Shown here in pieces: positions 21,798 to 61,079 of a stretch of DNA of 64,000 nt. Position numbers and translations under genes: made by a program. This DNA comes from Trichoplax adhaerens (Eukaryota; Animalia; Placozoa), in contig NW_002060952.1 of the NCBI RefSeq assembly GCF_000150275.1, forward strand, positions 332,482-396,481. The letters are read 5' to 3'. Position 1 is the stretch's first letter; each line of letters begins with the position of its first letter. Under the pieces are notes generated by a model. It saw only the letters and a list, made by a program, of their open reading frames with translations, did not search any database and was not told where the DNA came from.

Positions 21798-22612
21798 TGT
21801 AGAGTTCCAATTTAATAGCTTAAACATGGTCAAAAATTGCTTAAAATGCGTAGAAAAATAGAGAAATATCTAAAATTTGCATATCCAAACAATTTAGTGC
21901 TAATAAAGCTTTACTGATCGTAAAAGGAAATTTTTATAATAAAACATTGAAGTGAGCATAGGAATTAGACTGGAAAAAAATGATGGCGTCAGTCAATAAA
22001 ATGTAGAGTTCCATTTTAATTGCTTTAACATGGTCAAAAATTGTTTAAAATACGTAAAAAAATAGAGAAATATCTAAAATTTGCACATCCAAATAGTTTA
22101 GTAATAATAAAGCTTTCTTGACCGTAAATAGAAATTTTTAAAATAAACCATTGAAGTGAGCATAGGAATTAGACTGGAAAAAATGATGGCGTCAGTCAAT
22201 AAAAATGTAGAGTTCCATTTTAATTGCTTAAAAATGGTCAAAAATCATTTAAAATGTGTAGAAAAATAAAGAAATATCTAAAATTTGCATATCCAAACAG
22301 TTTAGAGCTAATAAAGCTTTACTGACCGTAAATGGAAATTTTTATAATAAAATATTCAAGTGAGTATAGGAATTAGACTGGAAAAAAATGATGGCGTCAG
22401 TCAATAAAAATATAGAGTTCCATTTTAATTGCTTAAACATAGTCAAAAATTGTTTAAAATGCGTAGAAAAATAGAGAAATATCTAAAATTTGCATATCCA
22501 AACAGTTTAGTAATAATAAAGCTTTCTTGGTCGTAAATGGAAATTTTTATAATAAAACATTGAAGTGAGCATAGGAATTAGGCTGGTAAAAAATGATGGC
22601 GTCAGTCAAAAA
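21798..22612. repeat. Tandem array, 4 x ~204 bp, high identity, between divergent SBNO and RNF25
   Basis: The agagttcca anchors are at 21801, 22005, 22209 and 22414. Each unit contains gaaatatctaaaatttgca and ggaattag.ctgg.aaaaaatgatggcgtcagtcaa. Confidence 0.95.
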
Positions 22613-27917: not shown

Positions 27918-29034
27918 TACTTAGCTAGTACAGGATATATATTGCAAAACGGTAAAATTTTTTTCATGTTATTTGCGTAGGTAACATTGATTAATTGTAG
28001 ATAATACTAGTACAGTCTCGCTGATGTAACATACGTGTATGTACGTGTAAGGAATGATTGTAAATATAAAGAAAATATCTAAATTTTTATATAAATTAAT
28101 TCCACCGACTTAGCTACTGACAGGCAATGTGTATTCAGTGTGAGTTTTAAGCCATCTCAGGTGGATATATTCTAATTGATAATGAATCACAACGTTGAAA
28201 CTTGAGTTATTATTTGTTTATACCTATTTCTGCAGATTGCTATAGTGTCATAATAGCTATAAAAGGGAATATCATTATCTTATTCACTTAGTAATATAGG
28301 TAGCATAGCATTGAAGCGTAGAATACAGTAACCAATTTTATTTTACACAAAGCAACAAAATTCATAATTATAATGTACAAAACATATATATTTGTTATAT
28401 ATGTCGTATATATATAAATTCGAATTTGTAGCACAAAAAATTCGGACAATATCTTAAAACTATACACTCACGATAGTGAATGACTGGTGATGCAGTTTAG
28501 TCGTCCATCTTTATTTTAAGTTGCTGCTATTATTACGCAGCACATCTGTGACAATAAAGTGATATCCTCAACACAAATGATATATAGATAAATGCTGATA
28601 TATTTTACAGAAATATCATATACAGCAAAAGATGGTCACTATTTACGTTATGAGAAACGAAATGACGCCATAGCAAAATCATGGCATCATTATACTACTT
28701 CTAATTAAGACTTATACGAGGTATATTATGCATGATTTATCAGGAGCAAAATAAATAAAAGATATGAAATATAACCGGTGATCTTTCTGAGCATTCGATG
28801 TGATGCGACAGTAAGAAGTCAAAATGATTATCAACTTTGGACTAGTGCAATTATTGACAATTCTTATGATATAACAATACAAAATCATGACATTGCTGAT
28901 CACATTTTTAAATACAGCACACAATTAATTCTTGTTATCATAAAAATTTAGTTTGATGCTAGATTAATTCCTAATCTTACAAAAAAGTTTGTAATAATGG
29001 AATAAATAATACGTTGTAAAATTTTCTATAAATG

Positions 29035-32000: not shown

Positions 32001-32774
32001 GATTTACTCACCCATTTTTAAAGCGTTCCATAAGAATTTCATATCGAACAGGAACATATCAATGATAATAACAATTTTTTCCGGTAGGACGCATGGCTAC
32101 ATTTGTAGGAAAGGGAGCCATTAAAATAAATAATATAACACATTAAGTAACGACTTATAGAATTCTTATGTTATTTCAAATTGATATCTGAATACGAGAA
32201 AGTATCTATGACGACCCACTGTTAGATTGAGAAATCAAAAATGAACTACTTTAAAATACTCTTGAAGTAGACTCTTGGAAATTGTAGCGTAGCGTGCCTA
32301 ATACAGGATTATCGGCATAAGATCAAAGTCAATTTGTATTAATTTACCTGTTGACCAGATAGCTGGCTATTCTCAATATTTCTTTGAGTTCGTAGAAGAT
32401 AAGCTTGAAGATCACTTTCTGTAACTGCATTTGCCATACCGAAAACGTCTATATTTCCCAGTAATTCAACACGAACACGGTAATTATTCTTGCTCAATTT
32501 AGGCAGCCAACCTCCCGGATAGTAACTATCCAGAATCTATGAGTAAAATAGAATATCAGATTTAATTATCATTGTAAATCATTGTTATAAAAGTTAAAGT
32601 CTATCTAAGGCTATAATATACTTGCTTAGTGAGTTACAATAATAGTATAATCATTAGCTAAGCTGCAACGAAGTTCAAATAAGATGTGAGTACGCATACC
32701 TCTGATGATTTGATTGATGTTGATTGTTGATGATTTTGAGAATTTCCCAATTCTATAGGAGTTTTCCATGGCAG
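29035..32774 (-). CDS. SEC14L2/3/4-like CRAL-TRIO + GOLD lipid-transfer protein, 5'-incomplete model (10 exons found)
   Basis: In-frame exons: LPWKTP...SSE, ILDSYYPGGWLP...VELLGNIDVFG, IVIIIDM...FLW, a 20-nt microexon at 31176-31195, IWPGMIEKIYIIRCP, VPACYGGNLTD...CSEW, and GOLD exons GSTLRWEIV...VGLYY and GYYTLELDNSHSLL...WYCIQV. Stop is at 29035. No start or CRAL-TRIO_N exons were located. Confidence 0.85.
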
Positions 32775-32869
32775 CTAGTCAAGAACAGCGAGAATAGTCG
32801 TTATATACGGACATACAATTAAACTCATATCTCATAAGTACCAAACACGGCTAGACTTATATAACGTAA

Positions 32870-33790
32870 AATAAACCGACTATATTTAATGTATGAAAAG
32901 TTTATACCTAGCTAAATGTTTTAATTATCTTATCAATATTTAAACTGCCGTATTTAATACATGATAAGTTGATTCCTAACTAAATATGTTAGCATAGCTT
33001 ATCAATATTTAAGCCGGTTTTATTGAATACGTTTATGTCTCAGTAAATATTTTAATGTATCTCGTCAACGTTTAAAATTTGCTATATTGAATAATTGATA
33101 GCTTATATCTAACAAACAATATCAATGTGTCTTATAAACATTCAGCTACACTATTAGGAGATATTATAAACTTTTGTAACTATTAATTCATCAGACTTTG
33201 ATTAGCTCTTTCTTGTACACTTAAATGCATATGCTATCGAAAATATCAGTAGAAGAGATTTATCTATAAATTCGAAATACATGTCTTTAGAAGGCAATTT
33301 TATATACACCTTTTAGCAAATGTGTAGACCCTAATATTATATCTATATTTTCGAATGTATATTACATAAAGTATTTCTATCTACAAAGCTTAGTATATGA
33401 ATAGAGACCTAAAGATTCTAATAATCATTTCTCTGTGCACTTATTTTCTCTTGCTCATAAAAATTGATATTGTCATCTGGATGTTATAGTAGATCTAAGT
33501 TAACTTATTCAATACTAGATAATAAATTCATATCCACTAAAATGTTAATATGTCTTATAAATATTCAGCTTTATCACTAGATACGGCAATATTATAGACT
33601 TTTATAACTGAATATCCTATATATATAGTTTACGTAGAAGAAATATTAAAAATGATCCTATCTATAAATTCTAAATATAGTTCCTTCTAAAGCATTTCTA
33701 CCTACTTCATTTAGTGAATATGTAGATCTAAATATTCTTGAAATAATTAAATGTGTCTATCTTCTCCTAATCCTATAGATTACTATTCTT
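32870..33790. repeat. Degenerate AT-rich local repeats
   Basis: ttatcaatatttaa.ccg..tttatt.aatac units recur. A ~400-bp-offset duplication is seen at tgtcttataaa.attcagct (33128 vs 33551) and tatctataaattc.aaata (33260 vs 33659). Confidence 0.6.
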
Positions 33791-36749
33791 ATTCGTAAGC
33801 TATAAAAGTTCTAATCCTATAGTAACTATTTGCTGTGAATCATTTGAAATTACATTATCGTATAAATTGGCTAAATTCAAGTTATAGAAGTCATCAAAAT
33901 TAGTCTAGTTATATACTTCGAGTACTCACTGAATTAATAAGACTTCCAGGGATTGATATTTTCCTTAGTCCATTAACTAAGGATAATAAAAGAAAAAAAT
34001 TACTTTATTTTCGCATTTTAAAGAATACAGGTTAATGCGATATATATCAATTTTATTTTATGAGAACTTAAAAATAAGAATGGATAAATTCTTCTCCATA
34101 CTAATTTGCTAGACTATTTATACTATAATTATTTCAATCAAATCCGAAATCCCTTTCACCCAACCTATTATTCAAATTGAACTAGTTTAAAATAGTAATT
34201 ATAACAAACAATTAATCAAATCACATCCATCTAGGGATCACTGCTAAAGTAGTCTACGGGACATCATAAAAGTTATAGAACGCATCCTCAGTTAAAATAG
34301 CTAAGGCTATACGTAGTTATGATACATTAAATGCTGCAGAAAAGCGTTAGCTAGAATACATTAAGGATACCCCAAAAAAACTTCCATCATAATAAGTAGC
34401 AGAAATAAATAAAAAAGAAGAAGGATTTGCTTAGTTTTCTACGTCAGAAACGATCAATCTTAGGGCTATTTCCATTTCAAGAGTAGCTATTTAGGATTTA
34501 ATCACGGTACATATAATTTATAAATGTTTATCGTTCACGTCAAAATCATACTATGACATGGTACTAAAAATGGTTGTAGAGTTGTAAAATTCTAGAATCT
34601 CTATTCTATTACTGTATTTGCTGCAGTTAAGTTTGGCAATCCTATATATAACCTATTTTATTTAATGTGCAGAAATGGCGATTAATAAGTTTTTCCTTGT
34701 ATTAATATTCAGTCTAGATACGAAAGTTAATGAATCTACGATAGTCAAAGTGAAAACCTTAGTGATTTCATGCAGGTTCTGCAGTTTAAGGTTTCATTGC
34801 ATACTAACATATATTTAAAAAGCTTTGCAAAAGTTAATTCTTTAATAGAAAAGTATTACTTTTACACTGGTATCTACGTATTGCTCCATCATTCATGTGG
34901 CTATAATTGTATACAGCATCAAGACGTATTATAATGTAAGATTAGCTAAAAAATACTTTTGTACAATGTTTGAATATCTGGATAACATTTTTGATTACTA
35001 TTGTCCATAATGACACATTAAAAGAACATTGCATACTGCAACCTTAATCCAGTCGATTATCGAGTGAATAAGATATTAATGAATATTAGCACAACAGAAG
35101 AAAATAGTTTCATCAAAATCTGTCCAATTGAGCGACGCTACCTCACGAAAGTAAATCTGATCATTAATTTTTTATTCTATATGTATGTAGGTGAAGATCC
35201 AGTTTTGTATAGGTAATAGTTATTTCACCCATTTATACCGGTAAACTTTCTTTTACAGTATTAATCTTAAGTAAGGTATTATGAAGGAAATAGTTGCTAT
35301 ACCCTATTCATAAATGTGGAAAACGAGTCATGAAGTACTAATCTATTATAGAAATTACCCCCTTTCTGACAGAAAATTTTTGTTCTGCCATTTACTACTA
35401 GAATTGTATCGGCAGTACTTATAATATACTATTAGAAGGATGTAATTAGAGATTTTAAAAATAAAAAACTTTGGTCAAAAAATCTGCCCAGCATTTTCTC
35501 CATCTATTATAGTGGAATATGATCAGTAGAAGCTCTCGTTAAATGCTATAAAATGGTATCATCTAGACTCTACCTTCTATTCGCGGTATAGGATGGTTAT
35601 TTGATTGATGCAGCATGGATTTCTTGTCTTTTAAGCTAGAATTAGGTTGCCAAACGGTCGATACAAGAAATAACGAGCGAATCGTCATGATGATATTCAA
35701 GAAATGATAATAATACTTTGTAGTAGTAATGGATATTTGGTGTAATTATACGGATTTTAAAAGCTGCTTGTTTATTCATAAAAGTAGAATACACTGAATA
35801 GATGATAATAAGTGTAGTGATATATAAACTAGCACTAGCTAGCTATGTTTTTGCTAATTACTACGCTAATAGCAGTACGTCAAAAAATCACGGTTGGAAT
35901 GTTTTTATAGGATTGAGAATTTCAAAGAGCTATTATATAATATTACTCACCGTAAAGTATGTGTCTTGATAAATGATGCCCAGTGAAGTTAAAAGCTTTA
36001 TGTCTTGTTTGTGAATATAGCAATAGATCAATATGGCTATCAACACTATAATAGTGTTGTTAAGATGATTAAAGTTAATAGAAAGTACCGTTACTGTTGT
36101 TGGCAGGTGTATAATTCAGGGATTGCAAAAAGTTGAAATAAATTGATTAAAAGTAGTGATTTCTTAGATCGATGACTACAGTAGAGGAAAACACTGTTGA
36201 CTAGCAAGCGATAAATACATAATAATAAAATCTGTAAAATATATCCATGCAGATGTTGAAATAGGAGTGATTAATCATTAATAGCTAAATCGATTATCTC
36301 GCGCGATATATATATATATATATACATATATTGTATAGGCTGTACAGCTATTGCGCGCATATCAGTAGCCTTAACATACCGTATATAGAAAAATTTCGGA
36401 GTAAAGTAATAGAAAAAGGGCATGTACCTTATTATGTAAAGGACATGAATCATTTTCTATTTGTTACAAAATGTAGAATAGATTATTGTCGTTTTTATAA
36501 ATACAGAAAGATGATTCTTTAAGGAAATGTTATTTTCTCTCTATTAAAAGTTTATCGATACTCTCTAATCTAATTCATTTTAGAGGCAAAAGTAGATGTA
36601 TTAGCTCAGTAACTTATTGATAAAACTAGCGGTAAATCTTCACTTTAAAGCAGGTCAGGAAAATAATCAATTAGTACAACATGCTATCATTTTGCTAGCA
36701 CATCATCAAATATTACTGAAGCTTATTGTTTTACATCTATAGAGATAAG

Positions 36750-44780: not shown

Positions 44781-45678
44781 ACGTGGATAACTAATTATTG
44801 AATAAGTGAAAATAATGCCTAGTTTTAGTTAGACTACAAAGTTGCAAAGCTACTCCAACTGCTATTTAACACCATGAAAGATTTACTTTTCAAGGTGCAA
44901 TTATTGTCAAATTTAGCAAACTATCTATCACCTATTCCTCTCTATTTGGAGTAGCATGGCTATTCCTGTCTAGCTAAGAGCAGATAGAATGCTTGCTTTG
45001 TCCTTTTTCTTCTGTGTATAGATCCTCTATCATCTCTATTGGTCCTATGCAGGAAGCTAGAATAGAATTAGTAGGAGGTCTACGTTATTTATTGTCTTAA
45101 TTAAATCAACTTGGAGCCATCCTCCATATTCAATGCTATTCCATATTGTAAATAGCCTAATGAATTGTCATTCAAGTAATTCTTTATTGTCCATCATGAT
45201 GGTCGGCATAAACTAGCAAATGTCTGCCAAAGTAATAATATTCATTATTCTAGAGGGCACCAAGTCGACCAGGCGGATCTTACTCATTGAATTAACGTGT
45301 TTACACAAATATATGACGAGAAGATGTTGCAACTGTATATTGTTAGCAAATGATGACTGTATTTAATTATGAATTAGCGATAAATTTTCCCATCGGCTAC
45401 TTGGTTATACTGGCTTAATAAATATTTTAAACATCGATTAGTTATACAGTATAAAATGAACTCCATATTATCATTTTCCTAGCTAGCTTACAACATTGCC
45501 TTGATTCAGTTGATATTTATATTATTGGCCAAATAAGTTCGAAAGCGTTTACTGACTACTCTATTACTACATTTTTTTCTCCCACTGCTGTTAGTCCTAG
45601 TAACATAGTTAATCCCATCTTTATTCAACGTTATTCATCTATTGTAAGGATACATGTCCATCCATTAGCACGATCATC

Positions 45679-48600
45679 ATGTTGAGTAAATTGGATGTTG
45701 CTCAAAACGAAGCATTGATCGAGGTAAGTTTATTTTTCCTATTGATTTAATTCTAAAATTAAATTATTTGCCGTCGTCATAGGGTAAAAATCTTAAGCAG
45801 CAATAAAATCAATTTTATCAAATTTCTATGCAATAGTAGTTAGCAGAGTAAGTAGTCTTTCTACTTCACGTTGACATTGTGAATGGATGACGGTAGCCAT
45901 AACTGCAAAGATCGTCGAGATTCAGCCATAACTAGGAATCGTTCTACGACATTTTTGTTAAAGATCTCGCTAGTATGATGACTTGTCTAATGTTACTGAT
46001 AGACATTGGATATTTAGATTTATGGATATCGATGTTAGGACAAATCCTTTACTTTCTATACAAGCATGTGCACCCCCAAAAAGTCGCCATTAAGCACAAT
46101 TTTGCATTAGTTCACCCTTTAAAAATGGCTACTTTTCCAGCAAAATTAACGCTCTTCCTTCGTATAACACTACTAGCGATCGTATAATAAATGCCCATCA
46201 CTTTCTACTTGCAAAATCAAGGCTTCTAATACGAAGAGAAAATCGTTCAATTACACTAGCACTGTTTGATATTAGAAAGAAGCAAGTGTAGTTATTTATA
46301 ACATCCATAGAAATATCTGCAAAAAAGTGATCATCAAGCCCAATCTTGTAGTGATTTAACTTTTCAAAATGGCTCTAGATTTCCAGCAAAATTGCCTTCT
46401 TCTTTCATACAACACCGTTCGTGATCAATTATCATCAATATCTATCCCTTTCAATTTAAAAAAAGCAAGGTTGCATTACGAAAGAAAATTTGCTTGATGG
46501 CACAATCAATATTTAGTATTAGAAATGAACGAGTGTAGTCATTCTTTTTGTTAAGTGTAATTATTGCCACCTTTCAAGAAAATCACTATACCAATTCAGG
46601 AGGTTATGTTGCTAATGAGTCAACGCAACTAGAGAAACTAGTCCGTAAATATCTATCAATAATTCTAATGTCTATTTCTGTATTGAACTTTCAAGATATT
46701 TCGAGTCTATTTAATAAGTAGGGACAAAATGAACGATGCCTTCTGTCCTCATCAATGCAGTCGAAACATGATTTTCTTTTATTAATCTCTTCCTTACTTA
46801 GCATTAATCCAGCCCTAATGCGACTCTCTGAAGTTAGTCTCTTTCTTGCTTGGTGCAAATCCAGTCAAAATACGATTCTCTGTGTATATAGTCTTCCTTG
46901 TTTGGCGCAATGCCTTCGATGATTATTATTTTAATGATAAATTGGGATAAAAATGAACTACGCCTTCCTGGCTGGTCAAGGCGGTCAAAATACATTCTGT
47001 GATATCTACTTTCTTCCCTGCTCGGCGTCGATGTAGTCTAAATACTATTCTCTGTTATTTTAGTGTATTCGTTACTTGGCGCAAGACCTTCTACAATTAT
47101 TAATTTGTTCGTCAATAGGGGTAAAAGTGAACTATCTCTTTTAGGCTTGCCAAGGTAGTCAAAACGCTATTCTCTGTCATTAATTTCTTCCTTCTTAGCT
47201 CGTCAACGCAGTCCAAATACTATTCTCTGTGATTTAGTTTCTTCTTTGCTTGACGCAATACTTTCTGTAACTATTACTTTATTAATAATAATTATTAGTA
47301 GGGATAAAAATGAACTATTTCCTCTTGGTATGTCAACATGGTCAAAACTACTATTTTCTGTTATTTAGTCTCTTCCTTGCTTGGTATGCTATCTCCTATA
47401 AATAATAACCTTTTTTCTGTGGATTAAGATCATAGAATACTGATTAAAATTTGTGTATTAGTAAGATCGAAAATTTCCTATCATTACTACTCTATCTATT
47501 CGTATCTTTCTACCTACATTAGGTTAGGATAGCCTTTCTAAACTATCCCAACCGTAATAATTTGAGAATTGGCTTCATGTAGCCTCTCTATCTTTCCTCG
47601 ATAATGGAAGTAAATGCACTCGTGTTTATTGTAGCTCCCAACATCACCACATGTTTTCCTTCTTTCTTTACAATGTCAGCCTATTCGATGAGTGCTTCAT
47701 CATTTTACTCTAAGAAGAACTGAAAAGGACAGCATAAAATGATCCATCGCGGCAATCGGCTATTGCTGTGATATGATCTATATAATTTATTTGACATGAT
47801 TATCAAAATGGTTCCCCTTCTGTAGACACCAATACTCTCTCTTGGCTAACGAATTTATCGACCTATTTTGACTTTTAAATAACTTTTAATTTAAGAATGA
47901 AGAAAGTCTAGTAGAGTAGGCACATAAAATAACATATCGAGCAAGTGGATAAACTTGATCAAAAGCTCTTTAGAGCTTTCTTTATCCTCTGTGATAATGT
48001 CCGAAAGGCTTAAGATTACCATTAGCCCGAATCAAGACCATTAGGATATTATAACAGGGGTTACCATCACTGATTTATACCTGTCTTTTGAACTAGGATT
48101 ATACGATATCCCTTTTTGATTAAGCAAGAAAGTTCAACATTCAATCTAATTGTTGTTGTTTAATTTATTTTGTTGTCTGTAATAGTTCCGCGACAATGTT
48201 AAATCACTACTGGATAAGCCAGAACAAGACTTGCACTTTCTACTGCGATTTTTACAAGGTAAGCTAAACTTTTATAGCTAAGGATAAAACTATTCCTTAT
48301 AAAGTAAATGAAAGAGCCATTTGGATAATCATCATATCATCGATGTCGTAAATAGCAAAAGGATGCCGATGGCATTGATATTGTACTTCTTTTTACGGAG
48401 ATTTGCACTTTTACTCTATTACTATCCTACTCACTTGCGCCCTCTACTTCTTCAACAAGTGGATAGAAATGCAATGGATAGAGTCCTTAAAGATACATTT
48501 GAATGCCAAATTTATCCCATTACAAATTTCTTATTGGATAACGAGGGGTAATTAGCAATACCTTGCATCATTCCTATGAAGTAAATTGATTATAGCCAGG

Positions 48601-51600
48601 CCTTGACAAACAGAAAAGCCATCAAACGAGCAATCCATAACAACTGCACGTAAAAATTTTCTAGGCTAAATAGCTTAAATCGATCAAGCTTTATAATTTA
48701 GCAACATCAATTTTATTTGAGTTCCATCTAAAATCAAGAGATGATTATTATCGTAAACCTCTAGTGCATTACTGACTTCCGTATAAAATATAGATGCTAT
48801 ATTGAGTGTATCTCAGTTTAATGAAAATGTCAATCTATTAATCCTAAACTTGCATACTGAATTACCAGTTTATTCCTTCTCTGGTAAAACTAATTCAACA
48901 GTATTTTATCACCCAAGGGCAATACCTTCTTCTAGCTTATTCTAGCACATCATTGAATCTATTCTAAAATTATTAGCGAATCCTTGAGTTAAGAAAACAT
49001 AGATGATCAACTGTTCAAAAGTATGCTAATGTTCTATTAGGAAAATATGATCTTGCCTACAAGTAGGCTAATGCTCACTTTTGCGATGGATTAATTCAGT
49101 AAAGCCATTACCCTCTGGATGATATTTGTAAACTAATAGTAAGCTCAGAAAATATGAAATACTACTTTACTACATGGATATCCATGCAAGATTATTCCAC
49201 TTATCATCAATAGTTTCTCATAGATCATTGTTGATATCAGATTACTTTTTTCTCATCATTATTCGGTAAAATCGTGAACTGTAGATCGATATACATTCAG
49301 AATTCGATACTACTGTACATAGAAGCAATCCATAGATGGGCGGTTGCATCTTTCAAGAAATAATCCCAAATTATCGGCCATGAAGTACTTCAAAGGTTCA
49401 TGAGATTTTTTGTGCTTCAAGTTAATATGATTTCTTTCAGCATGCGGTTGTGATGATCTACGGTTCAAACTATTAATATGTAGACATCGAACTCCTCCAT
49501 GTGAGAAATCAATGCCTTCAGTAGATCGTTAGAAACTCCATTTTAGTTGTATTAGTGATGCTTATGTAAATACTGCAGTCTATTTTTCTAAATAAACACT
49601 GACATAACATTGATATAATGAGTTAATTTCCCTCATTTGCATGTCTTTGAATGAATGCTTCAAATGGGGCTTTCCCTAAACTGATTATAGAATATCATTA
49701 GGATTGTAATTTAAATTTTACATATAGGTTTGCTATAACAGAAAATTACCTTGATGTACATCTAATTAAATCATTCTTCCCAACAATGAAGGATCAATAG
49801 TGATATTGACTTAACCGCTGATGCTAATGGCTGTTTTTTGGGCAAATCAATTAAATTCATTAACGAAACCCGTTAGCTTAGCACATGGGGTTATTTAAAA
49901 AATTATAGCCTATTGAATCAGATTTATATCTAAATTGATATCTTCATTTATACCTATGATTGCATATAACAGGTATAAGTATCTATCGAGACTCATGGCC
50001 AAATATCCGATTGTTGCTCACGATAAATCAAAATAATATGTTGCCTAGTCTAGAGTAAATGAATGTATCTTGCATTATACACTACCAAATCAGACTCAAT
50101 GAATTTATTCTTAGGGCTCTAAAAGTACATTTTAAATCATTAACTCCAGCATCATTAATTTCACTTTGTAAATATCCTTGCCGTATTTGTGTTATGAGCG
50201 TTATGTACGCTATCGCAACACTAGATCAATCATGCTAGCCAAGGTTAGAGACGTTATAGCAGTCTTAAATGCATAATCCACTTTTTATTTTGAATTACTT
50301 TCTCATCAGTAACATCTATATTCGCATTTTTATCGAATGGTGGGTAGAATGTTATGAATTAGACCTGTTGAGCTTAATTTTCATAGTTAAATATGGGGCG
50401 ATAAAAGGGACAGTATAGTAGGATACCCGTAAATGGTGCTAGAGGAATGTTAGCATAAGTTATAATAGTTGCAAATAGACTCAGAAACAAGTTAGAATAG
50501 CCACATTGAGCTTAATTAGTCTAATTCATTCTTGATTCTATTTGAGACTATTTGCAATTTACGCTAATATGACTCTACCATCATTTATTTCCTTCCATAA
50601 ATATTTTTTTGCTACAGAATGGTAGCATAAGCTGTAACAGACGTTAATAGACTCAGAAAAAAGTTAGAATAGCTATGTGGAGCTTAACTAATCTAATTCA
50701 TTCTTGAGCTTATTTAAGTCTACTTGCAATTTACGCTGACATGACTCTAGTATCATTCATTCCGCTCTATAAGTATCTTTACTATATCTAGACTTTGCAT
50801 ACCATTTCATCTCATATCTTACATGTATATCTCTGCTTGCTATAGAATGTTAGTATAGCCTATCATCGACGCAAATAGACTCAAAAATAAGTTAGAATAC
50901 TAGTAAATAATTTAATTAATGCAGTATGAGCTGCACATCATATTGTAGACTGAAATATCCTACTCAGTAAACCGGTATATGTAGTATCACGAGCGAGGAA
51001 ATATACTAGTGCATTTGCTATAAAATGTTATTATAACCTATGATAGACGCTAATAAACTCAAAAATAAGTTATAATAGCCATATTGAACTTAACTAGTCT
51101 AACTCATTCATATCCCATCAGTTAGATAATTGCTTGATAAGGTTATATTAAATTTGATTTATCATTGCTTGCTCATTATAATTACCTGAATATCTTCTCT
51201 AATCATTTTCTCTGACTAATCTTGATTAATCTTTACTTTCATTCATTTTCCCTGTGGTGCTTAATTCAAGCTAATAATTTCGATTTATCTAAGGCAACGG
51301 AAATGCTTAGAGAGGTAATTTTAGCTTTCAATGTCACTGTTTTTACTTGCTTATAAAATTTGCTTCAACAAAGATTGAATACTATCTATCGTAAAATTTG
51401 CCACACCAGAACTTAATTTTCCTACAAAAGTCTAATTATAAATCACTTTTATATCCAGCATGCACTAAAAGAATGGATTAAAATAGCTTTAGCAATAATT
51501 TAGAACTAAGCATAGAATAGGTCGGATTGAAACTGGCTATAGAGGCAGTTCTAATTCGACATGCGCACTATTTATCTTCTTAGTATGTCATTAGTCAAAA

Positions 51601-54600
51601 TTTTATATCGATTAAATCAATTATATGCGAGTAAAATAAAATATTGTACCAACACGGTAATATTACTCTGCATCAGTGAGGGAAAAGCCACTGTTTTTCA
51701 AAATAAGGCTGATTTTGTTTCGAATAATTTAGAGCCTTCGATTTCGTCGTCTATGGCGTTTAGGCGATAATCTTAGTCAATGGAACCCACCAGAGGTGAG
51801 ATCTTAGACAGCATGGAAATTTAAATGCCATAGCATCTTTCTCTCTGCTCTATCCAGTATAAAGGGCTGTAAACCGTCATAATACTCAAAATTTAACTAA
51901 TGTCATTCATTGTTCTATAATCTTTACAAAATATTACAAGTTAATCATGATTAAATTTAACCTTTTATTTCCTTCATCTCTTGAATACTGGTTAGGTGCT
52001 AAGAAATTATTTTCCAGGCGGTTGGCTTCCAGGATGTGATAAAGATGGCCATCCGATACGAATCGAGCCAATGGGAAAAGTTGACATGCCCGGAATTATA
52101 AAATCGTGCCAATACAGTGAATTAATCAAGTTCCATGCTGCTATTTCTGAAAAAGGTTTATTATTGTGTCGCGAGTTTGGCGATAAGGCAAGAGATTCAT
52201 AAGAACTATACATTCTCTCTGTGCTCAATATACTAATTTTAAATACTATGCTTTATTTTTACATTATTGCTTGAAATAGCAATATTAATTTCAAGCTCAG
52301 ATACTATATACTTGCTTTTTAATAGTTAGCTTGCAATACAAAATGTCAGTTTAAAATTGAAATATACTATGCTTAATTTTGATCATTTTATTTAAAATAT
52401 AAAATATCAATTCGTAATTTAGGTGTAAAATGTTTAATTTTTAAAACTTTATCCAGAATAGAAATATCAATTTCGAGTTTAGAACTCTGGGACTCAAGTT
52501 AGCTTAAAATACAAAATATCAATTTCGAATTGAAATACACGGTGCTTAATTTTGATCATTTTGCTTGAAATGTAAAACCTCGATTCGGAATTTAGATATG
52601 AAGTGCTCAATTTTTAAAACTTAACCCAGAATAGGAAGATCAATTTCAAATTTAGATATATTGTGCTTAATTTTTATCGTTTTGCTTAACATAACAATAT
52701 CAAATTCCAAATTTAGATAATACTTAATGAACAGTAAAATAATACTAATCCTTCAATATTAATTTCGGACATTATAGCTGAGAAAGTATATACATTCCTT
52801 TACACTTATTATCGATTTGGAAGGTCTAGGCTTGGATTTTCTGTGGAAGCCGGGTAAGAAACAATTTTTCTAGATTATCTATCTCTATTACATCTAACAA
52901 CCTACCCTAATTCTTTATTGAATTCCTAATTATGTCTTACAAACAAATATTCAACATGAATTTTCTAATCTTAGGCATTAATATATATACCGAAATGATC
53001 AGCGTGCAAGAACAAAATTATCCTGCACTTTTTAATAATATTTTCATTATCAACCCTCCCATGTTCTTTTCGCAAATATTCAGCATTGTCAAGCCGTTTC
53101 TACATAGTAGTGCTGATAAAATTATTATTTTAAAAGGTAAGCATAGCGTGAAATTAGTCATAAAATAGACAAATTTTGTGATTATAATATGGCATTGTTA
53201 CTCTATTAATAGACGATTACAGAGAAGAATTGCGAAAATATATTCCTGTCGAAAATATACCAGCATGCTACGGTGGTAGCTTGGTAGATGCTGATGGCGA
53301 CGAACACTGCCGTCAATGGGTATGAATTCTAGAATTCAAGAAGATTTCTTTCATACTTTACTGTATCTTAACTATTTACTATTCGAATCTATGGACTTTC
53401 CTATTCATCAACCTTTTCAAATAATATTAGCAACCTTCTGTCTTAGTCATAATTACATTAGATAGTAGTAGTAAATTAGCTTTATATAGGCAATTTGACA
53501 AGGTAGAACTCGCTTCTGTAAGATAACTCCTATCCTTACAAGCGCCTTTTAGCCATCTTCTAGTCAAGTCGCTATTAGATTGCAAGAAGTTATAATTTTA
53601 CCTTGTGCAAGGAATCTATTAAGCTATTAACAAATTGCGCTTTAATCATGCTGTGCCAGTGATCATCTACAACATTCTAGACAAGCATAATTGGGACAAA
53701 CTATTTAGTAAAGATAGCAAATTAATCACCAAAATATATATCAATTGGTTTATTACTTTTCAAATGCACTAGCAAATGATTTAAGTAATGTTCTACTCCG
53801 CATTTTATAACAGCGATTTATTTCTAGCTTGATATATGAACAAGCACTTTTATTTCAGAATGGAAAGCTGCAGTATCATATTATGCGATCAAAAATCATT
53901 TATCATTTCACACTTTTATTTAAAGTGTCTTGTATATTCAATATGCTACAATTTTTTAACCGATTTCAGGACTCACAGCAAACTTCATATTGAACGAATA
54001 GTTTTTGATAAAAACTGAAAGGATACGCTATTCCACTAAATAGAACTATAATTTTATACTCAATAGAAGCGGCTGATACAGCGAACATATCTCAATTTCA
54101 TAACTAACTTTTAGGATTTTTTAACTCGATGCTAGCGTGTAACTTTGAGATGAAAGCAGAAAAAATACTGCACGATTAAATATGATTGCAGTCTTTTATT
54201 TTACTCTTACCAGAAGTATTTTATGAAACAATTCCATGATCAAATATGATTGTGAACCCAAATCTTATTCTTATTATTAAGAACTTACAAAGCCCCTATA
54301 GAATAATTCTATAATCAACTTTTACGGTAGAAATTGTAAATTAATTATGATTAAATTATTGTATAGCTAAAATTTAAGTACTTTTACGCGTAAGATAATA
54401 ATTATACTTTATCCTGCTCATAGATAACCTATGGAAACCAAGTTCCGCAAAACTACTATATAAGCGATGATAGTGCCATCATCAGCGCTATGAAGAGTAA
54501 ACATCCGCCATTGAATTTAATTCTAGATGAGGTTAATGGATGGAATAGAAATGCAATCACTGATACAATTAATGAGTGTTTTAAATTCATCTTTCATCCA

Positions 54601-57600
54601 AAATCAAATGATGAACTGCGGTACCTTCCGTCCATAAACAACTAATTCCTTTCTAACATTCACTATTCCATCTCTAGTTCAAGGAAAGAATCAATGATTT
54701 AATGCTGCAAGATAATTACGATAATGAAACTTGTATGAAATGGCTGAAATGTTCGTTTTAGTAGCTTATATTAATAGCTTTACTTACTTTCCTGAATATT
54801 GGATCTCGTCAAGATGGACTTCTAATAACGACTAATTGTTAATCCATTTATATTAGGTTACGATTTTGATTTAATACAAGCTGAAGAAATGTTTCGCAGG
54901 GTTAGTTGATCCTATTTAAACAGGAATTAGTTCACCTTTTTAGTTATTAAATTACAATATGCCTTTACAAACTAAAATTAAAATCTTTGAAAAATTCGTA
55001 GAATGTAGAATTTAAGCAAATTTGGCGTCTAGATGATTCAATTCTTCATTGGATACCTCCGCTGGTAAGATAGATTCGACACTACGCAGACTATAATTGA
55101 GTATCAGGACTGATAATTAAAATGTTTAATTAGATATATGTTCTGTCTTTGGACTCTAGGTGTTACAAAAGTACTTTCCTGGAGGATGGCTACCTGGAGT
55201 TGACAGAGATGGTCATCCAGTTAGATTAGAACCACTTGGGAACATTGATTTTCGAGGAATTATGCATTCGTGTACATTTAGCGATTTATTACGCTTTCAC
55301 GTAAAAGTTGCTGAAGAAAACATTAATAAATGTAAAAAGCTAAGTTCAAAGGTAAGTATTGGAGTCTTAATTCTTACCAGCAGTAACCTACATCTATTCA
55401 AATCATCAATTTTCGAGAAATTATACTAACCAGAACCTTGAAAAGTTATAAACATCCTCAACACTCTAATTATTACAGCATTTACATTGTTTGTTGATAA
55501 TATAAGTCATTATAAATTCTGCATACGTAAAATAAAGTAGAGTCTTAATATTGATATCTAATCCCTAAGAAAGTAATTGTTTAATTTCATAACTAAAAGC
55601 TCTATAAATCAGCTGTACTTATATTAGTTAAAGATATTGACAAATAGAAAACGATTACAATTTCTTGGCATAAATTATCTGTACCTTATTTCGGAAAAAT
55701 TTCAAATCCTCGCGATAAAATTAAAAATTTATAATAAGTAGTCAATATAACTGTATCTTATAGTACCGGATTAATCTATAATTTTGATATTATTCATTGA
55801 AATAATCTTATTCTTTCCTTTAAATGTCTTTCAATCTTAAAAATTAGGCGGGGAGATCTATTGAAGGATATACGCTAATTGTCGATCTAAAAGGACTTAA
55901 TCGAAGTTTCTTATGGGGTCCAGGTAATAATTGAATTGATAATGTATTTGAAATGACTTCCTATACTTCAAAGGGTAAATTTTGCTAAATAAACATCTTG
56001 TGGAGGATACATTAGAACTAATACTTTTTATCTGATGTATTGATTTTTAGGTATCACCGTATTTAATGAGGTATTACAAATTAAGTACCTTAATCTATTT
56101 AATAAATAGCGTAATGTCTGTGTAATAAAATTCAAATTCAAAGAAGACGTCAATGGATAGTAATAGCTTTATTACAATTTATTGGGAGTCTAATGTGAAC
56201 GCTGGATAATAACTAACTATTAACAGAAGACCTCGCTTTATATGCAACTGGCAAACATCATCTGCCATTTTACAAGTTACTATAGCTTCCTAATTAATAC
56301 AATAGGAACTTCTGCTAACACCATCGTTTCTTATATTATCGTCTATCTTTCCAAATACGGCATAGATAATAACTGATTACATTGTTCATATACTTTCAGT
56401 TGCCAACACTATTATAATCATCATAATAGATAAGATATCTCTACTAATATAGGATCTCCTATATTAACGTCAACAGCTATTTTACTTAAGTTAGTTAATC
56501 ACTCTAATGTTACAGTCTGAAACTATTTTCTATCACTAAAACAACATTTCCACAGTGTTATCCTAATATTTTGACATTTTTTTCTACAGATGCTTAGTTT
56601 GATAGCCAATAACTATCCATCTAGCCTGAAAGTAATCTATCTCATCAGAAGTCCTCCAATATTTCCGGTCATCTATAACTTATGTAAATCATTCTTAGGA
56701 CGAGATACCGCCAAAGTTAAATTACTAGGATGTAAGTTTTACAAATGCATATAAGAATTTTAACGCAAGGGATAAAAACCTTTTGATTTTAATCAGCATC
56801 CTAATATATAGCTAATAAATTTAACATTTACCTTAAAAGTATATATCATAACTAGCATAAATACTTAACATCAAGTAAAATTGCTTTATAACTACATTTT
56901 TGATTATCTCAACTGATTATTACTCTGTCTACTTTAATATAATAATAATTACTAGCCGATTACAAAGAAACCTTGCTCAAAGTTATTAATCCAAATACAT
57001 TACCAAAATATTATGGTGGAAATTTAAAAGATTCAGACAGTGATGAGAAATGCTCCGAGTGGGTACGAATATTTTATTTTAGCAATACTATATATTTACT
57101 CAATAGGTGTCAATTAAAACAAGTGAAATATTTCAATTCTTCAAGCTTAGGATATTAAACTTATGAATAGTTTTTGCATTCCTACACGAAATAAAACTAA
57201 GTCTTTATAAGCTTTGGTAATTTATTAATTACTATTAACAATGTGTTTTTTACCAACGTTAGATTTGTTACGGCGGAGAGGTACCACACTCTTACTATAT
57301 TAATCAAAATGCCAGTTTACAAGACGATTTAAATTGGCAAAATGTAGTTATTTCAGCTGGGCTCTCATTTAAAGCTGAATATCCTGTTGATGTCAAAGGT
57401 AGCATCTTTCGGTAAGCTACGCTACTCTATTAGAATTAACCATCGATATATTCATTTTCAATCGATTCTCATATGATACCAGTCTTACTAGAGAGCAGTG
57501 GCTTAAAATTTTAATAATTTGGTAGCTTTTATACTACAATGTCCAAGAATAATATTAAATTTTTAAATTTAATGGTCATATTATTCCCCTGCAGGTGGAA

Positions 57601-59172
57601 ATTTCGATGTAAAAAGCACGACATAGGCTTTGGTGTATATTTTAAGAAAAATCTGAAAATTAACACCCTGCAAAATATGAAAAACCTCGTAAGAAAGACT
57701 GCTTATTGTTGAATTAGGACAACTTTAGTAATCTATCTGTCGCAAAACAGCTTTGCAACAAGATAGCGTAATGTACGATCAATAAGTCAATTCCTTGAAC
57801 TACGTATCAAGGAACGATATCTGCACTATCAGAAACACTTTTGCTCTACTAGCAGACTACACAAAGACTTAAACGCCTCGTATTTTACGTTAAACACTAA
57901 GTTTGAGAATCCTCTTTATTACACGATATACTGCATTTATATACTCTTCCTCAATAGTTCATGAGTCATAGTTAGTACGATTAACTTTGGAATCATTTAC
58001 TGAATTAGATATTAATTATAGCTACTGCTCCCTTAATGCAGACAACAGTATTTACGAACATAGATATCTGATGACTAATACAGAATAGTCAGATTACGAT
58101 ATGTCCTATCACGGAACATTTCCACGATAATTTACAATCTACCATAAGTAAGTTACAATCACAATGATTCGAACTGTAAGTAGATGATTTGCATTCCCTA
58201 TTATAACTACTAGTCCAAACTCCCGACGCTCTGCTGACGGGATACGATAATGTTCCCATTTGTTCATAATTAACAGATAGTATTACCATTCGAGGTTTTA
58301 TATATCCCAGTAATAGCCGGGTACTACTATATTTAAAGGAGATTGATTTAATGTACGTACTGATCGTGCATTTTCACATTGTTCACTTCGCTTTCGCCTA
58401 TCAGATCGCTGACTAACTGACATTATCCTCTTAGAAACACTTTTTGTTATATTATATATAGCAATCAAAAATAACCGGGACAGGGGAACTACAGTAGGGT
58501 GTCATAAAAAGTCAATGCTATATTAAAACACACCATATCCAAATTAGAAGTTAATTAAATAAGGATAGGCTAACAGAATTATCCTAATATAACACTATCA
58601 CAATATCCTAGATAATATATTCATCATTTCAATCTCAAGAAAAGAAATTTGTGTAACGCTAACCAGTTTTATATAATAATAAAAATCACGATCATATGAC
58701 GATTAATTCTCGAAAAATAAGGTTTTATTAGTTGTTACATGAAATCTGTATTTGATAATATTAAAAATTGCATAATCTACCTTTCTCTATTTTGTACAGT
58801 CTTAAGCCTTATTTATACCATTTATTTATCGTATAGATTCCTGTTGAACGACATTCTTGCCGAGTTATACCAGAAAGAGGTAGCTTATATTGTGAAGACG
58901 TCGGCATTTGTAAGTCTTAACAATTAGTTAACTTTGAAAGCATATATATAATCACTAAAACTATCATGCAATACTACGAGATATGCTTTCGCTATTAACT
59001 TATAAATATATATTTATTTTAATTTAAAATCATTATAGATGCGCTGGTTTTCGACAATTCTTATAGCTACTTTAATTGGAAAGATGTTAGCTATCAAATA
59101 GAAATTATAGAACCTAGAGTAACTGAAGATAATGATAGTAAACTGACTTCCGATAGTTATACTCTCGGCTGA
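45679..59172 (+). CDS. Tandem double-Sec14 protein: (CRAL-TRIO_N + CRAL-TRIO) x2 + GOLD, 21 exons, ~678 aa, SEC14L2-family
   Basis: Exons 45679-45723, 48186-48258, 51271-51314, 51733-51795, 51996-52187, 52778-52853, 52975-53136, 53213-53319, 54424-54531, 54678-54750, 54857-54900, 55002-55064, 55160-55351, 55848-55923, 56051-56070, 56590-56731 and 56956-57062, then GOLD exons near 57263, 57595, 58836 and 59039-59172, all splice in frame. Motifs FLLRFLQANNFDL/CMKWLKCYDFDL, YFPGGWLPGxDxDGHP, IxDLxGL, NYP and YGGxLxD each occur twice. Confidence 0.88.
46715..47400. repeat. Diverged tandem array (~4 units of ~175-225 bp with internal subrepeats) in intron 1 of the double-Sec14 gene
   Basis: ggataaaaatgaact-like anchors lie near 46721, 46945, 47119 and 47302, with recurrent gtcaaaata...attctctgt and cttggcgcaa. 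Confidence 0.8.
50440..51110. repeat. Four diverged repeats in intron 2
   Basis: gaatgttag.ata...aatagactca.aaa.aagttagaatagc occurs near 50445, 50617, 50844 and 51021. Confidence 0.8.
52225..52720. repeat. Degenerate ~55-60 bp minisatellite filling the GC-AG intron
   Basis: gcttaattttgatcattt..ctt.aaat..aaaatatcaatttc.aatttag recurs. Confidence 0.75.
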
Positions 59173-61079
59173 GAATCAGAACAATCACAACGTTATTACC
59201 AATTTTTATTATTCCACAACAAGAAGTATCGATATATTAAATTCAAATAATAATCACTTATTACTCATCCAATCACCTGGTTATGCCACTCACTATATTA
59301 ACTACTATGTTACCTGTTACCTACTATATTCAATGATGTCAAATTTTAATTCTGTAAGTATTTAATGTCACAAATATCATATAATGCTTTAGATCCAATA
59401 GATATTGCATGACTAATTTATTCGAATATCTTACTCGATTTTTGACTGTAATCAATAAGCATGTGCGGTATATGACCCCCAATATCGCTCTAAGATGATT
59501 AAGTAAACTAAGAACTGATGCAATAATGTGGCATCTAAAATTTCAATTATACGAGTATTAATAAAATTATTAATAAGTCTCGTAAATTTCAACATATTTC
59601 AGGTTTTTGTATCTATGCCAGTAGTTACAGTGACAAAATAAAATATGGTGGCACCTAGAAAGTAAAGTGTTTAGCAATATATAATTGTTGCTTCATGTTC
59701 ATAATTTTCGAGGTCTAGTAACCGGTAATATCGAGCAGTTTCTTAGCAATTGGTTGAATACCGGTCAATGAACTTGTAATTTATGCAGCAGTGGATCCTA
59801 GCAGGTTAAACATCTAATGCGAAACTTTGCGATCGATACTGTGAAATATCCGAAAAATCATTGCTATGAAACATTACGCGATATATTTACAATAATATTT
59901 TTAAATACGATATAAATCAACTGATTTAACTCTTTGATATTGTTCAATTATACTTCTAATAATCAATTACAAAGTTCATACTTGTAATTTATTATTTTGA
60001 CCCTAGAAGTACAAAGCATTTCTGTTTAGATGATTGCGTATTGATATGACCGAAAAAGCAAGGTCCGTTGCATGTAAGAGGACCTTATTAATCGATACAC
60101 AATATTTAATTGAGATCAGACGCTATAACTGATGAACTATTATATTGGGCAATATATACATTCTAGGAATTTATTAACAAAATAACTATCGAAGCCCTAT
60201 TGATCTATTTGTATTGTTAAGGCTTAAGCCGATCACGAATAATTACATTTATCTTATTTTTCATATCCATATCAGTTATCATAGGATATAATGATGTTTT
60301 TGTCAATAATTTATCTTGTTTACATATCTCCTTATCTTGTTGCTGATAAACAAGAATTCTAATGCTAAAACCCATTCTATGAAATTTCCATAAATAGTAA
60401 GATCAAGCAAATAAATTTAATCTAATATTGATCGTTGTTGATATCAAAACACGGTAAAATGCCTCCACATGATGTAAAAAGATGCCAAAAGAATCAATAG
60501 CATTATGCTAAGGCTTAAATCAAAAATTAAATGATATCATTCACTGAAATAACTAAGCGTTGTTTCTTTAACAATAGAGAAATCTTCTAAACTTGTATAA
60601 AATAATACTTTGGTAGAGGTATATCTCAAAATAATGAAGTCTAGAAATTCATCTATGCCGTGCAGACAAAAGCACTTCTAAATTGATAACTTAATTGAGT
60701 TGTGTGTCATAAATGGAAACATCCGCAAAGATGTTTATCAGTAATGGCATCAAAATTATTCGTTAAAGACATTGCTTTAACTGACTAGTACTGCTTTATC
60801 TTGTTGAAGTAAGTATAATTCTGTAAGCTTTAAATTATATTTAGCTTTAGTAGCAATAAATTGTCATATTTATTAAAAATAAATAGTATACAGCAGTGGC
60901 AATCATAGTCCTCCAGCAAATTCTTCATTTCGTGGAACAATTTTTATACTTATAAATATTTACAGCGCGTACCGATAGTTAATATTCGACTAAATAATAC
61001 GATAAAATAGTAGTGAATTCTGGCTTCAATCTATGCATTGAAGCAGTGCCATGAGCTTATCATTGAGCATACATTCTTG

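What the first reader, a model, noticed from the sequence alone, without database searches (positions are those of the whole stretch)
45679..59172. Fused double-Sec14 lipid-transfer protein: two tandem CRAL-TRIO pockets and one GOLD domain
Seen in sequence: the exons splice in one uninterrupted frame (~678 aa) holding two full CRAL-TRIO_N+CRAL-TRIO modules. Their exon sizes match exactly (73/73, 44/44, 63/63, 192/192, 76/76, 162 vs 20+142, 107/107 nt), and one GOLD domain follows. The first module has no GOLD exons of its own. The two modules are strongly diverged at protein level yet both are intact, which suggests an old, selected fusion. Established: SEC14L2/3/4-type proteins have a single lipid pocket plus GOLD. 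Inference: this is a two-pocket lipid carrier or exchanger that could hold two ligands or channel between them. I do not recognise this architecture as described in animals, and automated annotation would probably split it into two genes.
Basis: partly seen in the sequence, partly recalled or inferred. Interest (0 to 1): 0.85.

Follow-up and report, generated by a model that had tools for sequence, protein, structure and literature searches.

The report
Placozoan double-Sec14 plus GOLD gene
A Trichoplax gene really does encode one 678-residue protein with two diverged Sec14-type lipid-binding modules and one GOLD domain, made as a single mRNA; the layout is rare and undescribed, but public annotation already models the gene as one unit.

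Summary
Twenty-one + strand exons (45679-59172) splice into one open 2037-nt frame of 678 aa.

The 108-nt bridge exon (54424-54531) is chimeric. Its 5' 66 nt resemble the start of the GOLD-linker exon. Its 3' 42 nt are an ATG-led copy of exon 1.

Assembled RNA contigs from three studies each carry every joint laid, from exon 4 to exon 18, on one contig. That includes 53319>54424 and 54531>54678. Intron 9 has almost no coverage.

The genome is Trichoplax adhaerens or a near-identical strain. Public models XP_002115228.1 (608 aa) and Trichoplax sp. H2 RDD46460.1 (592 aa) already join both modules in one gene. They mis-splice module 1, so the claim that annotation would split the gene is wrong.

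Module 2 plus GOLD aligns end to end with human SEC14L2. The modules are 41% identical over 245 residues without a gap. Synonymous sites are saturated and pN is 0.39, so the duplication is old and constrained.

Multi-Sec14 proteins were rare in the searches, and no paper found describes one. A two-pocket function is inference only. This is a new variant of a known family, of moderate interest.

The parts
45679..45723 (+). E1, start codon and first 15 residues (MLSKLDVAQNEALIE)
   Evidence: Identical to the N-terminus of the H2 public model P0001. The length of the X5 contig upstream of E5 (331 nt) fits E1-E4 plus about 106 nt of UTR.
48186..48258 (+). E2, 73 nt, N-terminal helical region of module 1
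   Evidence: AG acceptor, GT donor, phase matches E10. Missing from both public models.
51271..51314 (+). E3, 44 nt, module 1
   Evidence: Its 3' end appears as the loose end before 51731 in RNA contigs of X4, X5 and X6 (table 7).
51733..51795 (+). E4, 63 nt, module 1
   Evidence: Joint 51795>51996 in three runs.
51996..52187 (+). E5, 192 nt, start of CRAL_TRIO of module 1; GC donor
   Evidence: CRAL_TRIO 14.1 bits. 50% identical to E13. The RNA joint fits 52187>52778 after the tool's 2-base shift, giving GC..AG.
52778..52853 (+). E6, 76 nt, module 1
   Evidence: joints in three runs.
52975..53136 (+). E7, 162 nt, core of CRAL_TRIO of module 1
   Evidence: CRAL_TRIO 34.7 bits, E 1.9e-8. Matches SEC14L2 residues 169-220. 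RNA joints.
53213..53319 (+). E8, 107 nt, end of module 1
   Evidence: Joint 53319>54424 (skips 1104) in X4, X5 and X6 with 107 letters on the shorter side.
54424..54531 (+). E9, 108-nt chimeric bridge exon. The 5' 66 nt are like the start of E18 (I.YG..VP..YYI). The 3' 42 nt are an ATG-led copy of E1 (MKSKHPPLNLILDE).
   Evidence: Spliced on both sides in three runs. 100% identical in both public models.
54678..54750 (+). E10, 73 nt, module 2 counterpart of E2
   Evidence: Joint 54531>54678 in three runs.
54857..54900 (+). E11, 44 nt, module 2
55002..55064 (+). E12, 63 nt, module 2
55160..55351 (+). E13, 192 nt, start of CRAL_TRIO of module 2
55848..55923 (+). E14, 76 nt, module 2
56051..56070 (+). 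E15, 20-nt microexon (first part of the E7 counterpart)
   Evidence: the only AG/GT candidate whose peptide (GITVFNE) resembles module 1 (GINIYTE). Its letters lie between the two sides of joint 55926>56588 in three runs (table 5c).
56590..56731 (+). E16, 142 nt, core of CRAL_TRIO of module 2
   Evidence: CRAL_TRIO 34.1 bits; joints.
56956..57062 (+). E17, 107 nt, end of module 2
57263..57411 (+). E18, 149 nt, linker and start of GOLD
   Evidence: Aligns to SEC14L2.
57595..57688 (+). E19, 94 nt, GOLD
   Evidence: GOLD_2 16.5 bits on the exon alone. Its start is the loose end behind 57413 in X4, X5 and X6.
58837..58909 (+). E20, 73 nt, GOLD
   Evidence: Identical in both public models.
59039..59172 (+). 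E21, 134 nt, end of GOLD and stop codon
   Evidence: GOLD_2 37.5 bits on the public model P0151, residues 536-585.

Best explanation
This is one real Trichoplax gene encoding a 678-aa cytosolic SEC14L-type protein. A second complete Sec14 lipid-binding module (N-terminal helices plus CRAL-TRIO) sits in front of a canonical SEC14L2-like unit (helices, CRAL-TRIO, GOLD).

It arose in the placozoan lineage in one of two ways. Either one partial tandem duplication ran from about the start codon to 66 nt into the GOLD-linker exon. Or a whole-gene duplication was followed by a deletion that removed the first copy's GOLD exons and the intergenic DNA. Either way the breakpoint is frozen in the chimeric exon E9.

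Shown: the gene structure, the single spliced mRNA, homology of both modules to Sec14 domains, the great age of the duplication, and purifying selection.

Inferred: both modules still bind a hydrophobic ligand. Because they share only 41% identity, they probably prefer different ligands. The protein would then act as a covalent hetero-dimer of lipid-transfer domains, with the single GOLD domain as the shared docking part.
For: The open 678-aa frame has matching exon sizes and phases. In X4, X5 and X6 (three studies), one contig of 2251, 1968 or 3233 nt at depth 39-137 carries all joints laid; in X4 the E4>E5 and E5>E6 joints lie on a second contig of similar depth, 56.4.

Intron 9 is essentially uncovered. 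In bin 54580-54771 the depths are 20.0, 15.2 and 53.5, against 19.5, 14.8 and 52.1 expected from E10 alone. So E9 is neither a terminal exon nor read through (my arithmetic). There is no + strand AATAAA between 51640 and 55325.

Both independent public assemblies and annotations, H1 and H2, contain the same E9 and join the modules. Pfam finds two CRAL_TRIO stretches (151 bits) and GOLD_2 (37.5 bits) on the H1 model. Module 2 plus GOLD matches SEC14L2 (1OLM) residues 15-391, E 6e-87. Module 1 exon E7 matches SEC14L2 at E 3e-5.

The two modules are 41% identical with no gap. pS is 0.83 (saturated) against pN 0.385. Seven of the 8 listed exonic strain differences are synonymous, including the one in E9. 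Module 1, module 2 and the neighbouring paralogue form one starred clade, 99/98.
Against: Contigs are not single molecules. E9 is 108 nt, longer than the assembler's word, so a minor transcript that starts in intron 8 and uses E9's internal ATG cannot be excluded; it would give a plain SEC14L2-like protein. Intron 8 has low but consistent coverage (depth 3-7).

No ligand, pocket geometry or lipid-binding test exists for either module. The full 678-aa chain could not be folded or searched as one piece.

No placozoan outside the near-identical H1/H2 pair could be checked, so conservation of the fusion itself is unproven.

Between H1 and H2, the two residue differences seen lie in module 1 (2 in about 124 comparable residues) and none in the 424 residues from E9 on. 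This hints at weaker constraint on module 1.
Confidence: 0.85

Rival explanations
1. These are two functionally separate genes. Module 2 plus GOLD would be mainly made from its own promoter in intron 8, starting translation at the ATG inside E9 (54490). The joined mRNA would be a read-through by-product.
For: E9 keeps an in-frame ATG-led copy of exon 1. Intron 8 shows low coverage in all three RNA runs, depth 3-7. Contigs cannot show transcript starts.
Against: In each of three runs the assembler ran one unbranched contig through E8-E9-E10 at full depth. No extra coverage lies just upstream of E9: bin 54388-54579 has 28.5, 21.7 and 76.3, against 28.8, 21.9 and 77.0 expected from E9 alone. Module 1 has stayed open, gapless relative to module 2 and with pN far below pS, although it has no stop or GOLD of its own before E9.
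Confidence: 0.07
2. It is one fused protein, but module 1 no longer carries lipid. It would be a degenerate Sec14-fold domain used for regulation, membrane targeting or protein contact, as BCH domains are. The protein would then work as an ordinary one-pocket SEC14L2 with an N-terminal appendage.
For: In the conserved stretch that reads FL..DT.KK in SEC14L2, module 1 has Ala where SEC14L2 and module 2 have Thr. My recollection that this Thr is part of the yeast Sec14 phosphoinositide-binding set is a lead, not a test. The only H1/H2 residue differences seen lie in module 1. Module 1 exon E5 reaches only 14 bits on CRAL_TRIO.
Against: Module 1's core exon scores as high on CRAL_TRIO as module 2's, 34.7 against 34.1 bits. 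Its branch in the tree is shorter than module 2's, 0.53 against 0.80. There is no indel relative to module 2 over 245 residues.
Confidence: 0.2
3. It is an assembly or annotation artefact: a mis-join of two tandem paralogues.
For: Tandem paralogues are often merged by gene predictors. One other double in the hit list (Brassica cretica, P0007) has two modules that match the query identically and looks like such a merge.
Against: The same structure occurs in two independent assemblies, H1 and H2. Spliced RNA contigs of three studies show it, including the junctions on both sides of E9.
Confidence: 0.01

Closest known systems
Human SEC14L2 (supernatant protein factor / TAP; PDB 1OLM, 1O6U, 4OMJ) and SEC14L3/4
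   Same: Module 2 plus GOLD aligns over SEC14L2 residues 15-391 of 403, E 6e-87. The order is the same: N-terminal helices, CRAL-TRIO pocket domain, linker (I.YGG..P..YY), jelly-roll GOLD domain.
   Different: An extra complete Sec14 module of about 254 residues, plus a 36-residue chimeric linker, precedes it. SEC14L2-type proteins have one pocket.
SEC14L1-type proteins (PRELI/MSF1 + CRAL-TRIO + GOLD, about 600-720 aa)
   Same: They have a similar length and also carry a second lipid-binding domain N-terminal to CRAL-TRIO plus GOLD. Several hits of that length were of this type (P0112, P0116, P0133).
   Different: Their N-terminal domain is PRELI, an unrelated fold. Here it is a second Sec14 module derived from the same gene.
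Lipid-transfer proteins with internally duplicated transfer domains (from my own knowledge: yeast Lam2/Ysp2 and Lam4 with two StART-like domains; BPI/CETP pseudo-dimers)
   Same: Two paralogous lipid-binding modules lie on one chain, produced by internal duplication.
   Different: The folds and families are different. This is only an analogy for how the protein might work, not a membership claim.
Other multi-CRAL_TRIO database proteins: P0004 (1172 aa, three CRAL_TRIO stretches, environmental eukaryote contig) and P0007 (Brassica cretica, 636 aa)
   Same: They have more than one CRAL_TRIO domain on one predicted chain.
   Different: They have no GOLD domain and are not close relatives, at 23-32% identity. 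P0007's two copies match identically and may be a merge of tandem genes. Neither has transcript support that was examined here.

Membership tests
SEC14L2-type (CRAL_TRIO_N + CRAL_TRIO + GOLD) lipid-binding proteins | CRAL_TRIO (PF00650) domain above the Pfam gathering score | tested here: met
   Public model P0151 scores 151.3 bits with 2 stretches, against a cut-off of 22.6. Single exons E7 and E16 score 34.7 and 34.1 bits.
SEC14L2-type (CRAL_TRIO_N + CRAL_TRIO + GOLD) lipid-binding proteins | C-terminal GOLD domain | tested here: met
   GOLD_2 (PF13897) scores 37.5 bits against a cut-off of 28.4 on P0151. The alignment runs through the whole GOLD domain of 1OLM. There is only one GOLD, after module 2.
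SEC14L2-type (CRAL_TRIO_N + CRAL_TRIO + GOLD) lipid-binding proteins | CRAL_TRIO_N (PF03765) N-terminal helical domain | tested here: inconclusive
   There is no PF03765 hit on the exons or on P0151, even at E up to 5. Even so, module 2 aligns with SEC14L2 from residue 15, which covers that region, and module 1 aligns with module 2 from residue 10.
SEC14L2-type (CRAL_TRIO_N + CRAL_TRIO + GOLD) lipid-binding proteins | End-to-end sequence homology to a solved family member | tested here: met
   Module 2 plus GOLD against 1OLM gives E 6.4e-87 over residues 15-391. Module 1 was tested exon by exon only: E7 against SEC14L2 gives E 2.9e-5, and E5 against Sfh5 gives E 2.5e-3.
SEC14L2-type (CRAL_TRIO_N + CRAL_TRIO + GOLD) lipid-binding proteins | Binding of a hydrophobic ligand in the pocket | not testable with these tools
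   This needs recombinant protein and lipid-binding or transfer assays, or a structure.
Single-pocket architecture of animal SEC14L proteins | One Sec14 module per chain | tested here: not met
   There are two modules on one mRNA. This is the respect in which the protein departs from the family.

The most novel reading that the evidence does not exclude
The fusion is as old as the duplication and is conserved across Placozoa. The two pockets have diverged to hold different lipids. The protein would then work as a built-in hetero-dimer that couples binding or release of one lipid to the other (exchange, hand-over or coincidence sensing), with the GOLD domain docking it to a partner. That would be a natural single-chain test case for heterotypic exchange ideas in Sec14 biology.
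Probability: 0.2. Interest if true: 0.7.

Novelty: new variant of a known kind. Interest (0 to 1): 0.45.

Why it matters
Sec14-superfamily proteins are thought to work through one pocket that senses or swaps lipids. A natural protein with two diverged pockets on one chain, kept open long after synonymous sites saturated, would be a ready-made system for asking whether two Sec14 pockets can cooperate.

It is also a clean textbook example of a gene-fusion breakpoint preserved inside an exon, with the old start codon now read as an internal methionine.

On the practical side, both public gene models are wrong in module 1. They miss a GC-AG intron and lack exons E2-E3; the H1 model also lacks E1, and the H2 model also lacks most of E6. 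The RNA-supported 678-aa model corrects them.

The gene is lineage-restricted and its function is untested, so the wider impact is moderate.

Tried and rejected
1. Exon-level search for fragments from other placozoans, using search for homologous proteins with E13, found no candidate. The tool's length window and word index make this blank uninformative.

2. The whole-protein search with the public model P0151 found only the H2 orthologue and two distant single-module proteins.

3. I tried to order the three Trichoplax copies to tell a one-step internal duplication from duplication plus deletion. The best tree pairs module 1 with the very long-branched neighbour (94/82), but AU tests do not reject the alternatives (p 0.27 and 0.25). 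The order is unresolved.

4. dN/dS between the modules is not usable: synonymous sites are saturated (pS 0.83), so only pN < pS can be stated.

5. Literature searches for the gene's accessions, for Trichoplax with Sec14 or CRAL-TRIO, and for phrases such as "two CRAL-TRIO domains" found nothing relevant. The one phrase hit (PMC9919377, on Chlamydomonas CPSFL1) is a review sentence that I did not check against the protein; it may mean the N-terminal and main CRAL-TRIO domains of one module.

6. A poly(A) hexamer scan is weak evidence only. There is no + strand AATAAA in or around introns 8 and 9, but variant signals were not tested.

7. Steps left out. The joined 678-aa model has no reference, so it was not sent to any search, family, fold or structure tool. 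Database work was done exon by exon by reference, or with database proteins. The joined frame and the two module peptides were built only inside local scripts: for the frame check, for pairwise comparison with the proteins the tools had fetched, for pN/pS and for the tree. AlphaFold was not run, neither on the full chain (no reference) nor on the public model P0151, which I chose not to fold because its module 1 is mis-spliced. The only structural figure is the ESM Atlas's own model of the imperfect 608-aa public protein (pTM 0.51, pLDDT 0.71).

Full report
**What is in the sequence**

Three-frame reading of 45500-59400 showed two sets of Sec14-like coding pieces on the + strand. I fixed exon borders by hand and by script. 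The model has 21 exons from 45679 to 59172, with a 2037-nt coding sequence of 678 aa and no internal stop.

- Exon 1 is 45 nt.
- Module 1 is exons 2-8, of 73, 44, 63, 192, 76, 162 and 107 nt.
- Module 2 is exons 10-17, of 73, 44, 63, 192, 76, 20+142 and 107 nt.
- The intron phases are the same in both modules.
- GOLD is exons 18-21, of 149, 94, 73 and 134 nt.
- Every intron is GT-AG except intron 5, which has a GC donor at 52188.
- The 20-nt microexon is 56051-56070. It was the only AG/GT candidate whose peptide resembles the matching part of module 1.

**The bridge exon**

E9 (54424-54531, 108 nt, 36 codons) is chimeric. Its first 22 codons resemble the first codons of E18, the linker that leads into GOLD; both share the pattern I.YG..VP..YYI. 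Its last 14 codons begin with ATG and resemble exon 1: MKSKHPPLNLILDE against MLSKLDVAQNEALIE.

The breakpoint of the event that joined the two copies therefore lies inside this exon. The second copy's start codon is now an internal methionine.

**Is it one transcript?**

One call each of the look-up of sequencing runs and read laying was available. I laid 51700-57450 on Logan contigs of four runs from four studies.

In X4, X5 and X6, one contig per run (2251, 1968 and 3233 nt, at depth 51, 39 and 137) carries the joints. In X5 and X6 the contig runs from E4>E5 to E17>E18. In X4 the first two joints lie on a second contig of similar depth. Specific points:

- The joints include 53319>54424 (skips 1104) and 54531>54678 (skips 146).
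- The GC-AG intron joint is present.
- The letters of the microexon lie between the two sides of its joint.
- Loose ends continue into E3 upstream and E19 downstream.
- X8 shows only unspliced short pieces and looks like DNA.

Contigs are not molecules, and E9 is longer than the assembler's word. So I also looked at depth, which the tool itself warns is one flat figure per contig.

- The bin holding E9 has 28.5, 21.7 and 76.3, against 28.8, 21.9 and 77.0 expected from E9 alone.
- The bin holding intron 9 and E10 has 20.0, 15.2 and 53.5, against 19.5, 14.8 and 52.1 expected from E10 alone.

Practically nothing starts just upstream of E9 or reads past its donor into the stop at 54643. Intron 8 has low coverage (depth 3-7). 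That fits pre-mRNA, but a minor internal start cannot be excluded. There is no + strand AATAAA between 51640 and 55325. The joined mRNA is the only assembled form in three independent studies.

**Whose genome, and what is already on record**

A profile of E5+E13 was searched against 1.84 billion representative proteins. It gave one strong hit, P0001, with two matched stretches.

Cluster look-up names P0001 as SEC14-like protein 2 of Trichoplax sp. H2 (RDD46460.1, 592 aa). Its cluster mate P0151 is Trichoplax adhaerens TRIADDRAFT_59198 (XP_002115228.1, UniRef B3S552, 608 aa). The window's genome has 105.6 Mb in 1414 contigs. Exons E8-E21 are 100% identical to P0151. So this is T. adhaerens or a near-identical strain.

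Both public models already run through module 1, E9, module 2 and GOLD as one gene. Automated annotation therefore did not split it. Both models are wrong in module 1:

- The H1 model lacks E1-E3, misses the GC donor, and reads into intron 7.
- The H2 model lacks E2, E3 and most of E6.

No 678-aa version was found.

**Domain and family tests**

Exon by exon, by reference:

- E7 and E16 pass the CRAL_TRIO cut-off, at 34.7 and 34.1 bits.
- E5 and E8 give weak CRAL_TRIO hits.
- E19 gives a weak GOLD_2 hit.

On the public H1 model, Pfam finds CRAL_TRIO with two stretches (151 bits) and GOLD_2 (37.5 bits). On the H2 model only one stretch survives the mis-splicing. The Pfam CRAL_TRIO_N model is not matched anywhere.

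Module 2 plus GOLD aligns with human SEC14L2 (1OLM) over residues 15-391, E 6e-87. So module 2 plus GOLD is a canonical SEC14L2-type unit, including its N-terminal helices. Module 1 exon E7 matches SEC14L2 residues 169-220, and E5 matches yeast Sfh5.

**Age and constraint**

- Module 1 and module 2 are 41% identical over 245 residues with no gap.
- Over the same codons pS is 0.83, which is saturated, and pN is 0.385.
- Among the strain differences listed by read laying, 7 of the 8 in exons are synonymous, including the one in E9. Intron 8 carries far more differences.
- Between the H1 and H2 proteins, the two differences I could place lie in module 1. There are none in the 424 residues from E9 on.

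A tree was built of the two modules, the neighbouring paralogue and 23 single-module relatives from sponges, oyster, crinoid, amphioxus and unnamed sources. It puts module 1, module 2 and the neighbour (P0105, window minus strand, about 29.0-35.7 kb) in one starred clade (99/98). The copies therefore arose within the placozoan lineage.

The order inside that clade is unresolved (AU p 0.27 and 0.25). I cannot tell a one-step partial tandem duplication from a whole-gene duplication followed by deletion.

**How rare is the layout?**

Of the 170 proteins at E up to 0.001, three clusters proved to hold more than one module when checked:

- the Trichoplax cluster itself;
- P0004, with three CRAL_TRIO stretches, from an environmental eukaryote contig;
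- P0007, from Brassica cretica, whose two copies match identically and which is probably a merge.

Six more rows list two or more matched stretches. Of these, P0002 showed no similarity to the model, P0014 and P0094 are of single-module length, and three were not examined. The other 570-730-aa hits that I scanned with Pfam are SEC14L1-type (PRELI + CRAL-TRIO) or otherwise single-module. The ESM Atlas's nearest large clusters are all single-module.

No paper in the library names this gene or describes a true double Sec14 protein.

**How it most likely works**

Shown: one mRNA and one open frame, two homologous Sec14 modules, one GOLD domain, and long-term constraint.

Inferred: the protein is a soluble lipid-binding or lipid-transfer protein of the SEC14L2 kind with a second pocket. 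Because the pockets share only 41% identity, they probably prefer different ligands.

In the conserved stretch after the core strand, SEC14L2 and module 2 have Thr where module 1 has Ala. From memory this Thr belongs to the phosphoinositide-contacting set of yeast Sec14. That is a lead, not a test.

The main functional rival, which I put at about 0.2, is that module 1 has become a non-carrying regulatory or docking domain.

The joined 678-aa model has no reference. I sent it to no search, family or fold tool, and it was handled only inside local scripts.

**Verdict**

This is a new variant of a known family, already present but unremarked in databases. Interest 0.45.

Noticed in passing
window about 29000-35700, minus strand: A third SEC14L-type gene with one module plus GOLD lies here. 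It is 100% identical to database protein P0105 (411 aa). It groups with the two modules of the fused gene but has a very long branch (2.98). Its domain scores are weak: CRAL_TRIO 39 bits, partial, and GOLD_2 12.6 bits. It is a fast-evolving paralogue in the same small cluster.
   Followed up: partly
window 52188-52777 (intron 5): This is a GC-AG intron, confirmed by RNA joints in three runs. Both public gene models avoid it and so mis-splice module 1.
   Followed up: yes
window 56051-56070: A 20-nt microexon splits in module 2 what is a single 162-nt exon in module 1. That means an intron gain or loss since the duplication. RNA contigs confirm it.
   Followed up: yes
window 53320-54423 (intron 8): Reading past the E8 donor gives a stop after one codon (GTA TGA). 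Intron retention would therefore yield a module-1-only protein of 255 aa. Intron 8 has low but consistent coverage (depth 3-7) in all three RNA runs, a little more than the other introns.
   Followed up: partly
window 50437-50761 (intron 2): A 172-bp unit is repeated 1.9 times at 81% match.
   Followed up: no
window about 21900-22560, + strand: AATAAA hits recur in a regular pattern (spacings of about 36, 57 and 111 nt, repeated three times). This suggests a tandem repeat of roughly 200 bp.
   Followed up: no
database protein P0004 (1172 aa, JGI/IMG contig of 13 kb): This predicted protein from an unnamed environmental eukaryote has three CRAL_TRIO stretches (221 bits). Multi-Sec14 chains therefore exist outside Placozoa.
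   Followed up: partly
G000:C1389:792646-792747: There is a weak fourth match to the E13 exon elsewhere in the genome (E 1e-3, 41% identity), possibly another Sec14-family gene. An earlier scan note (s1-756288) reports a SEC14 plus spectrin-repeat giant on another piece of this genome.
   Followed up: no
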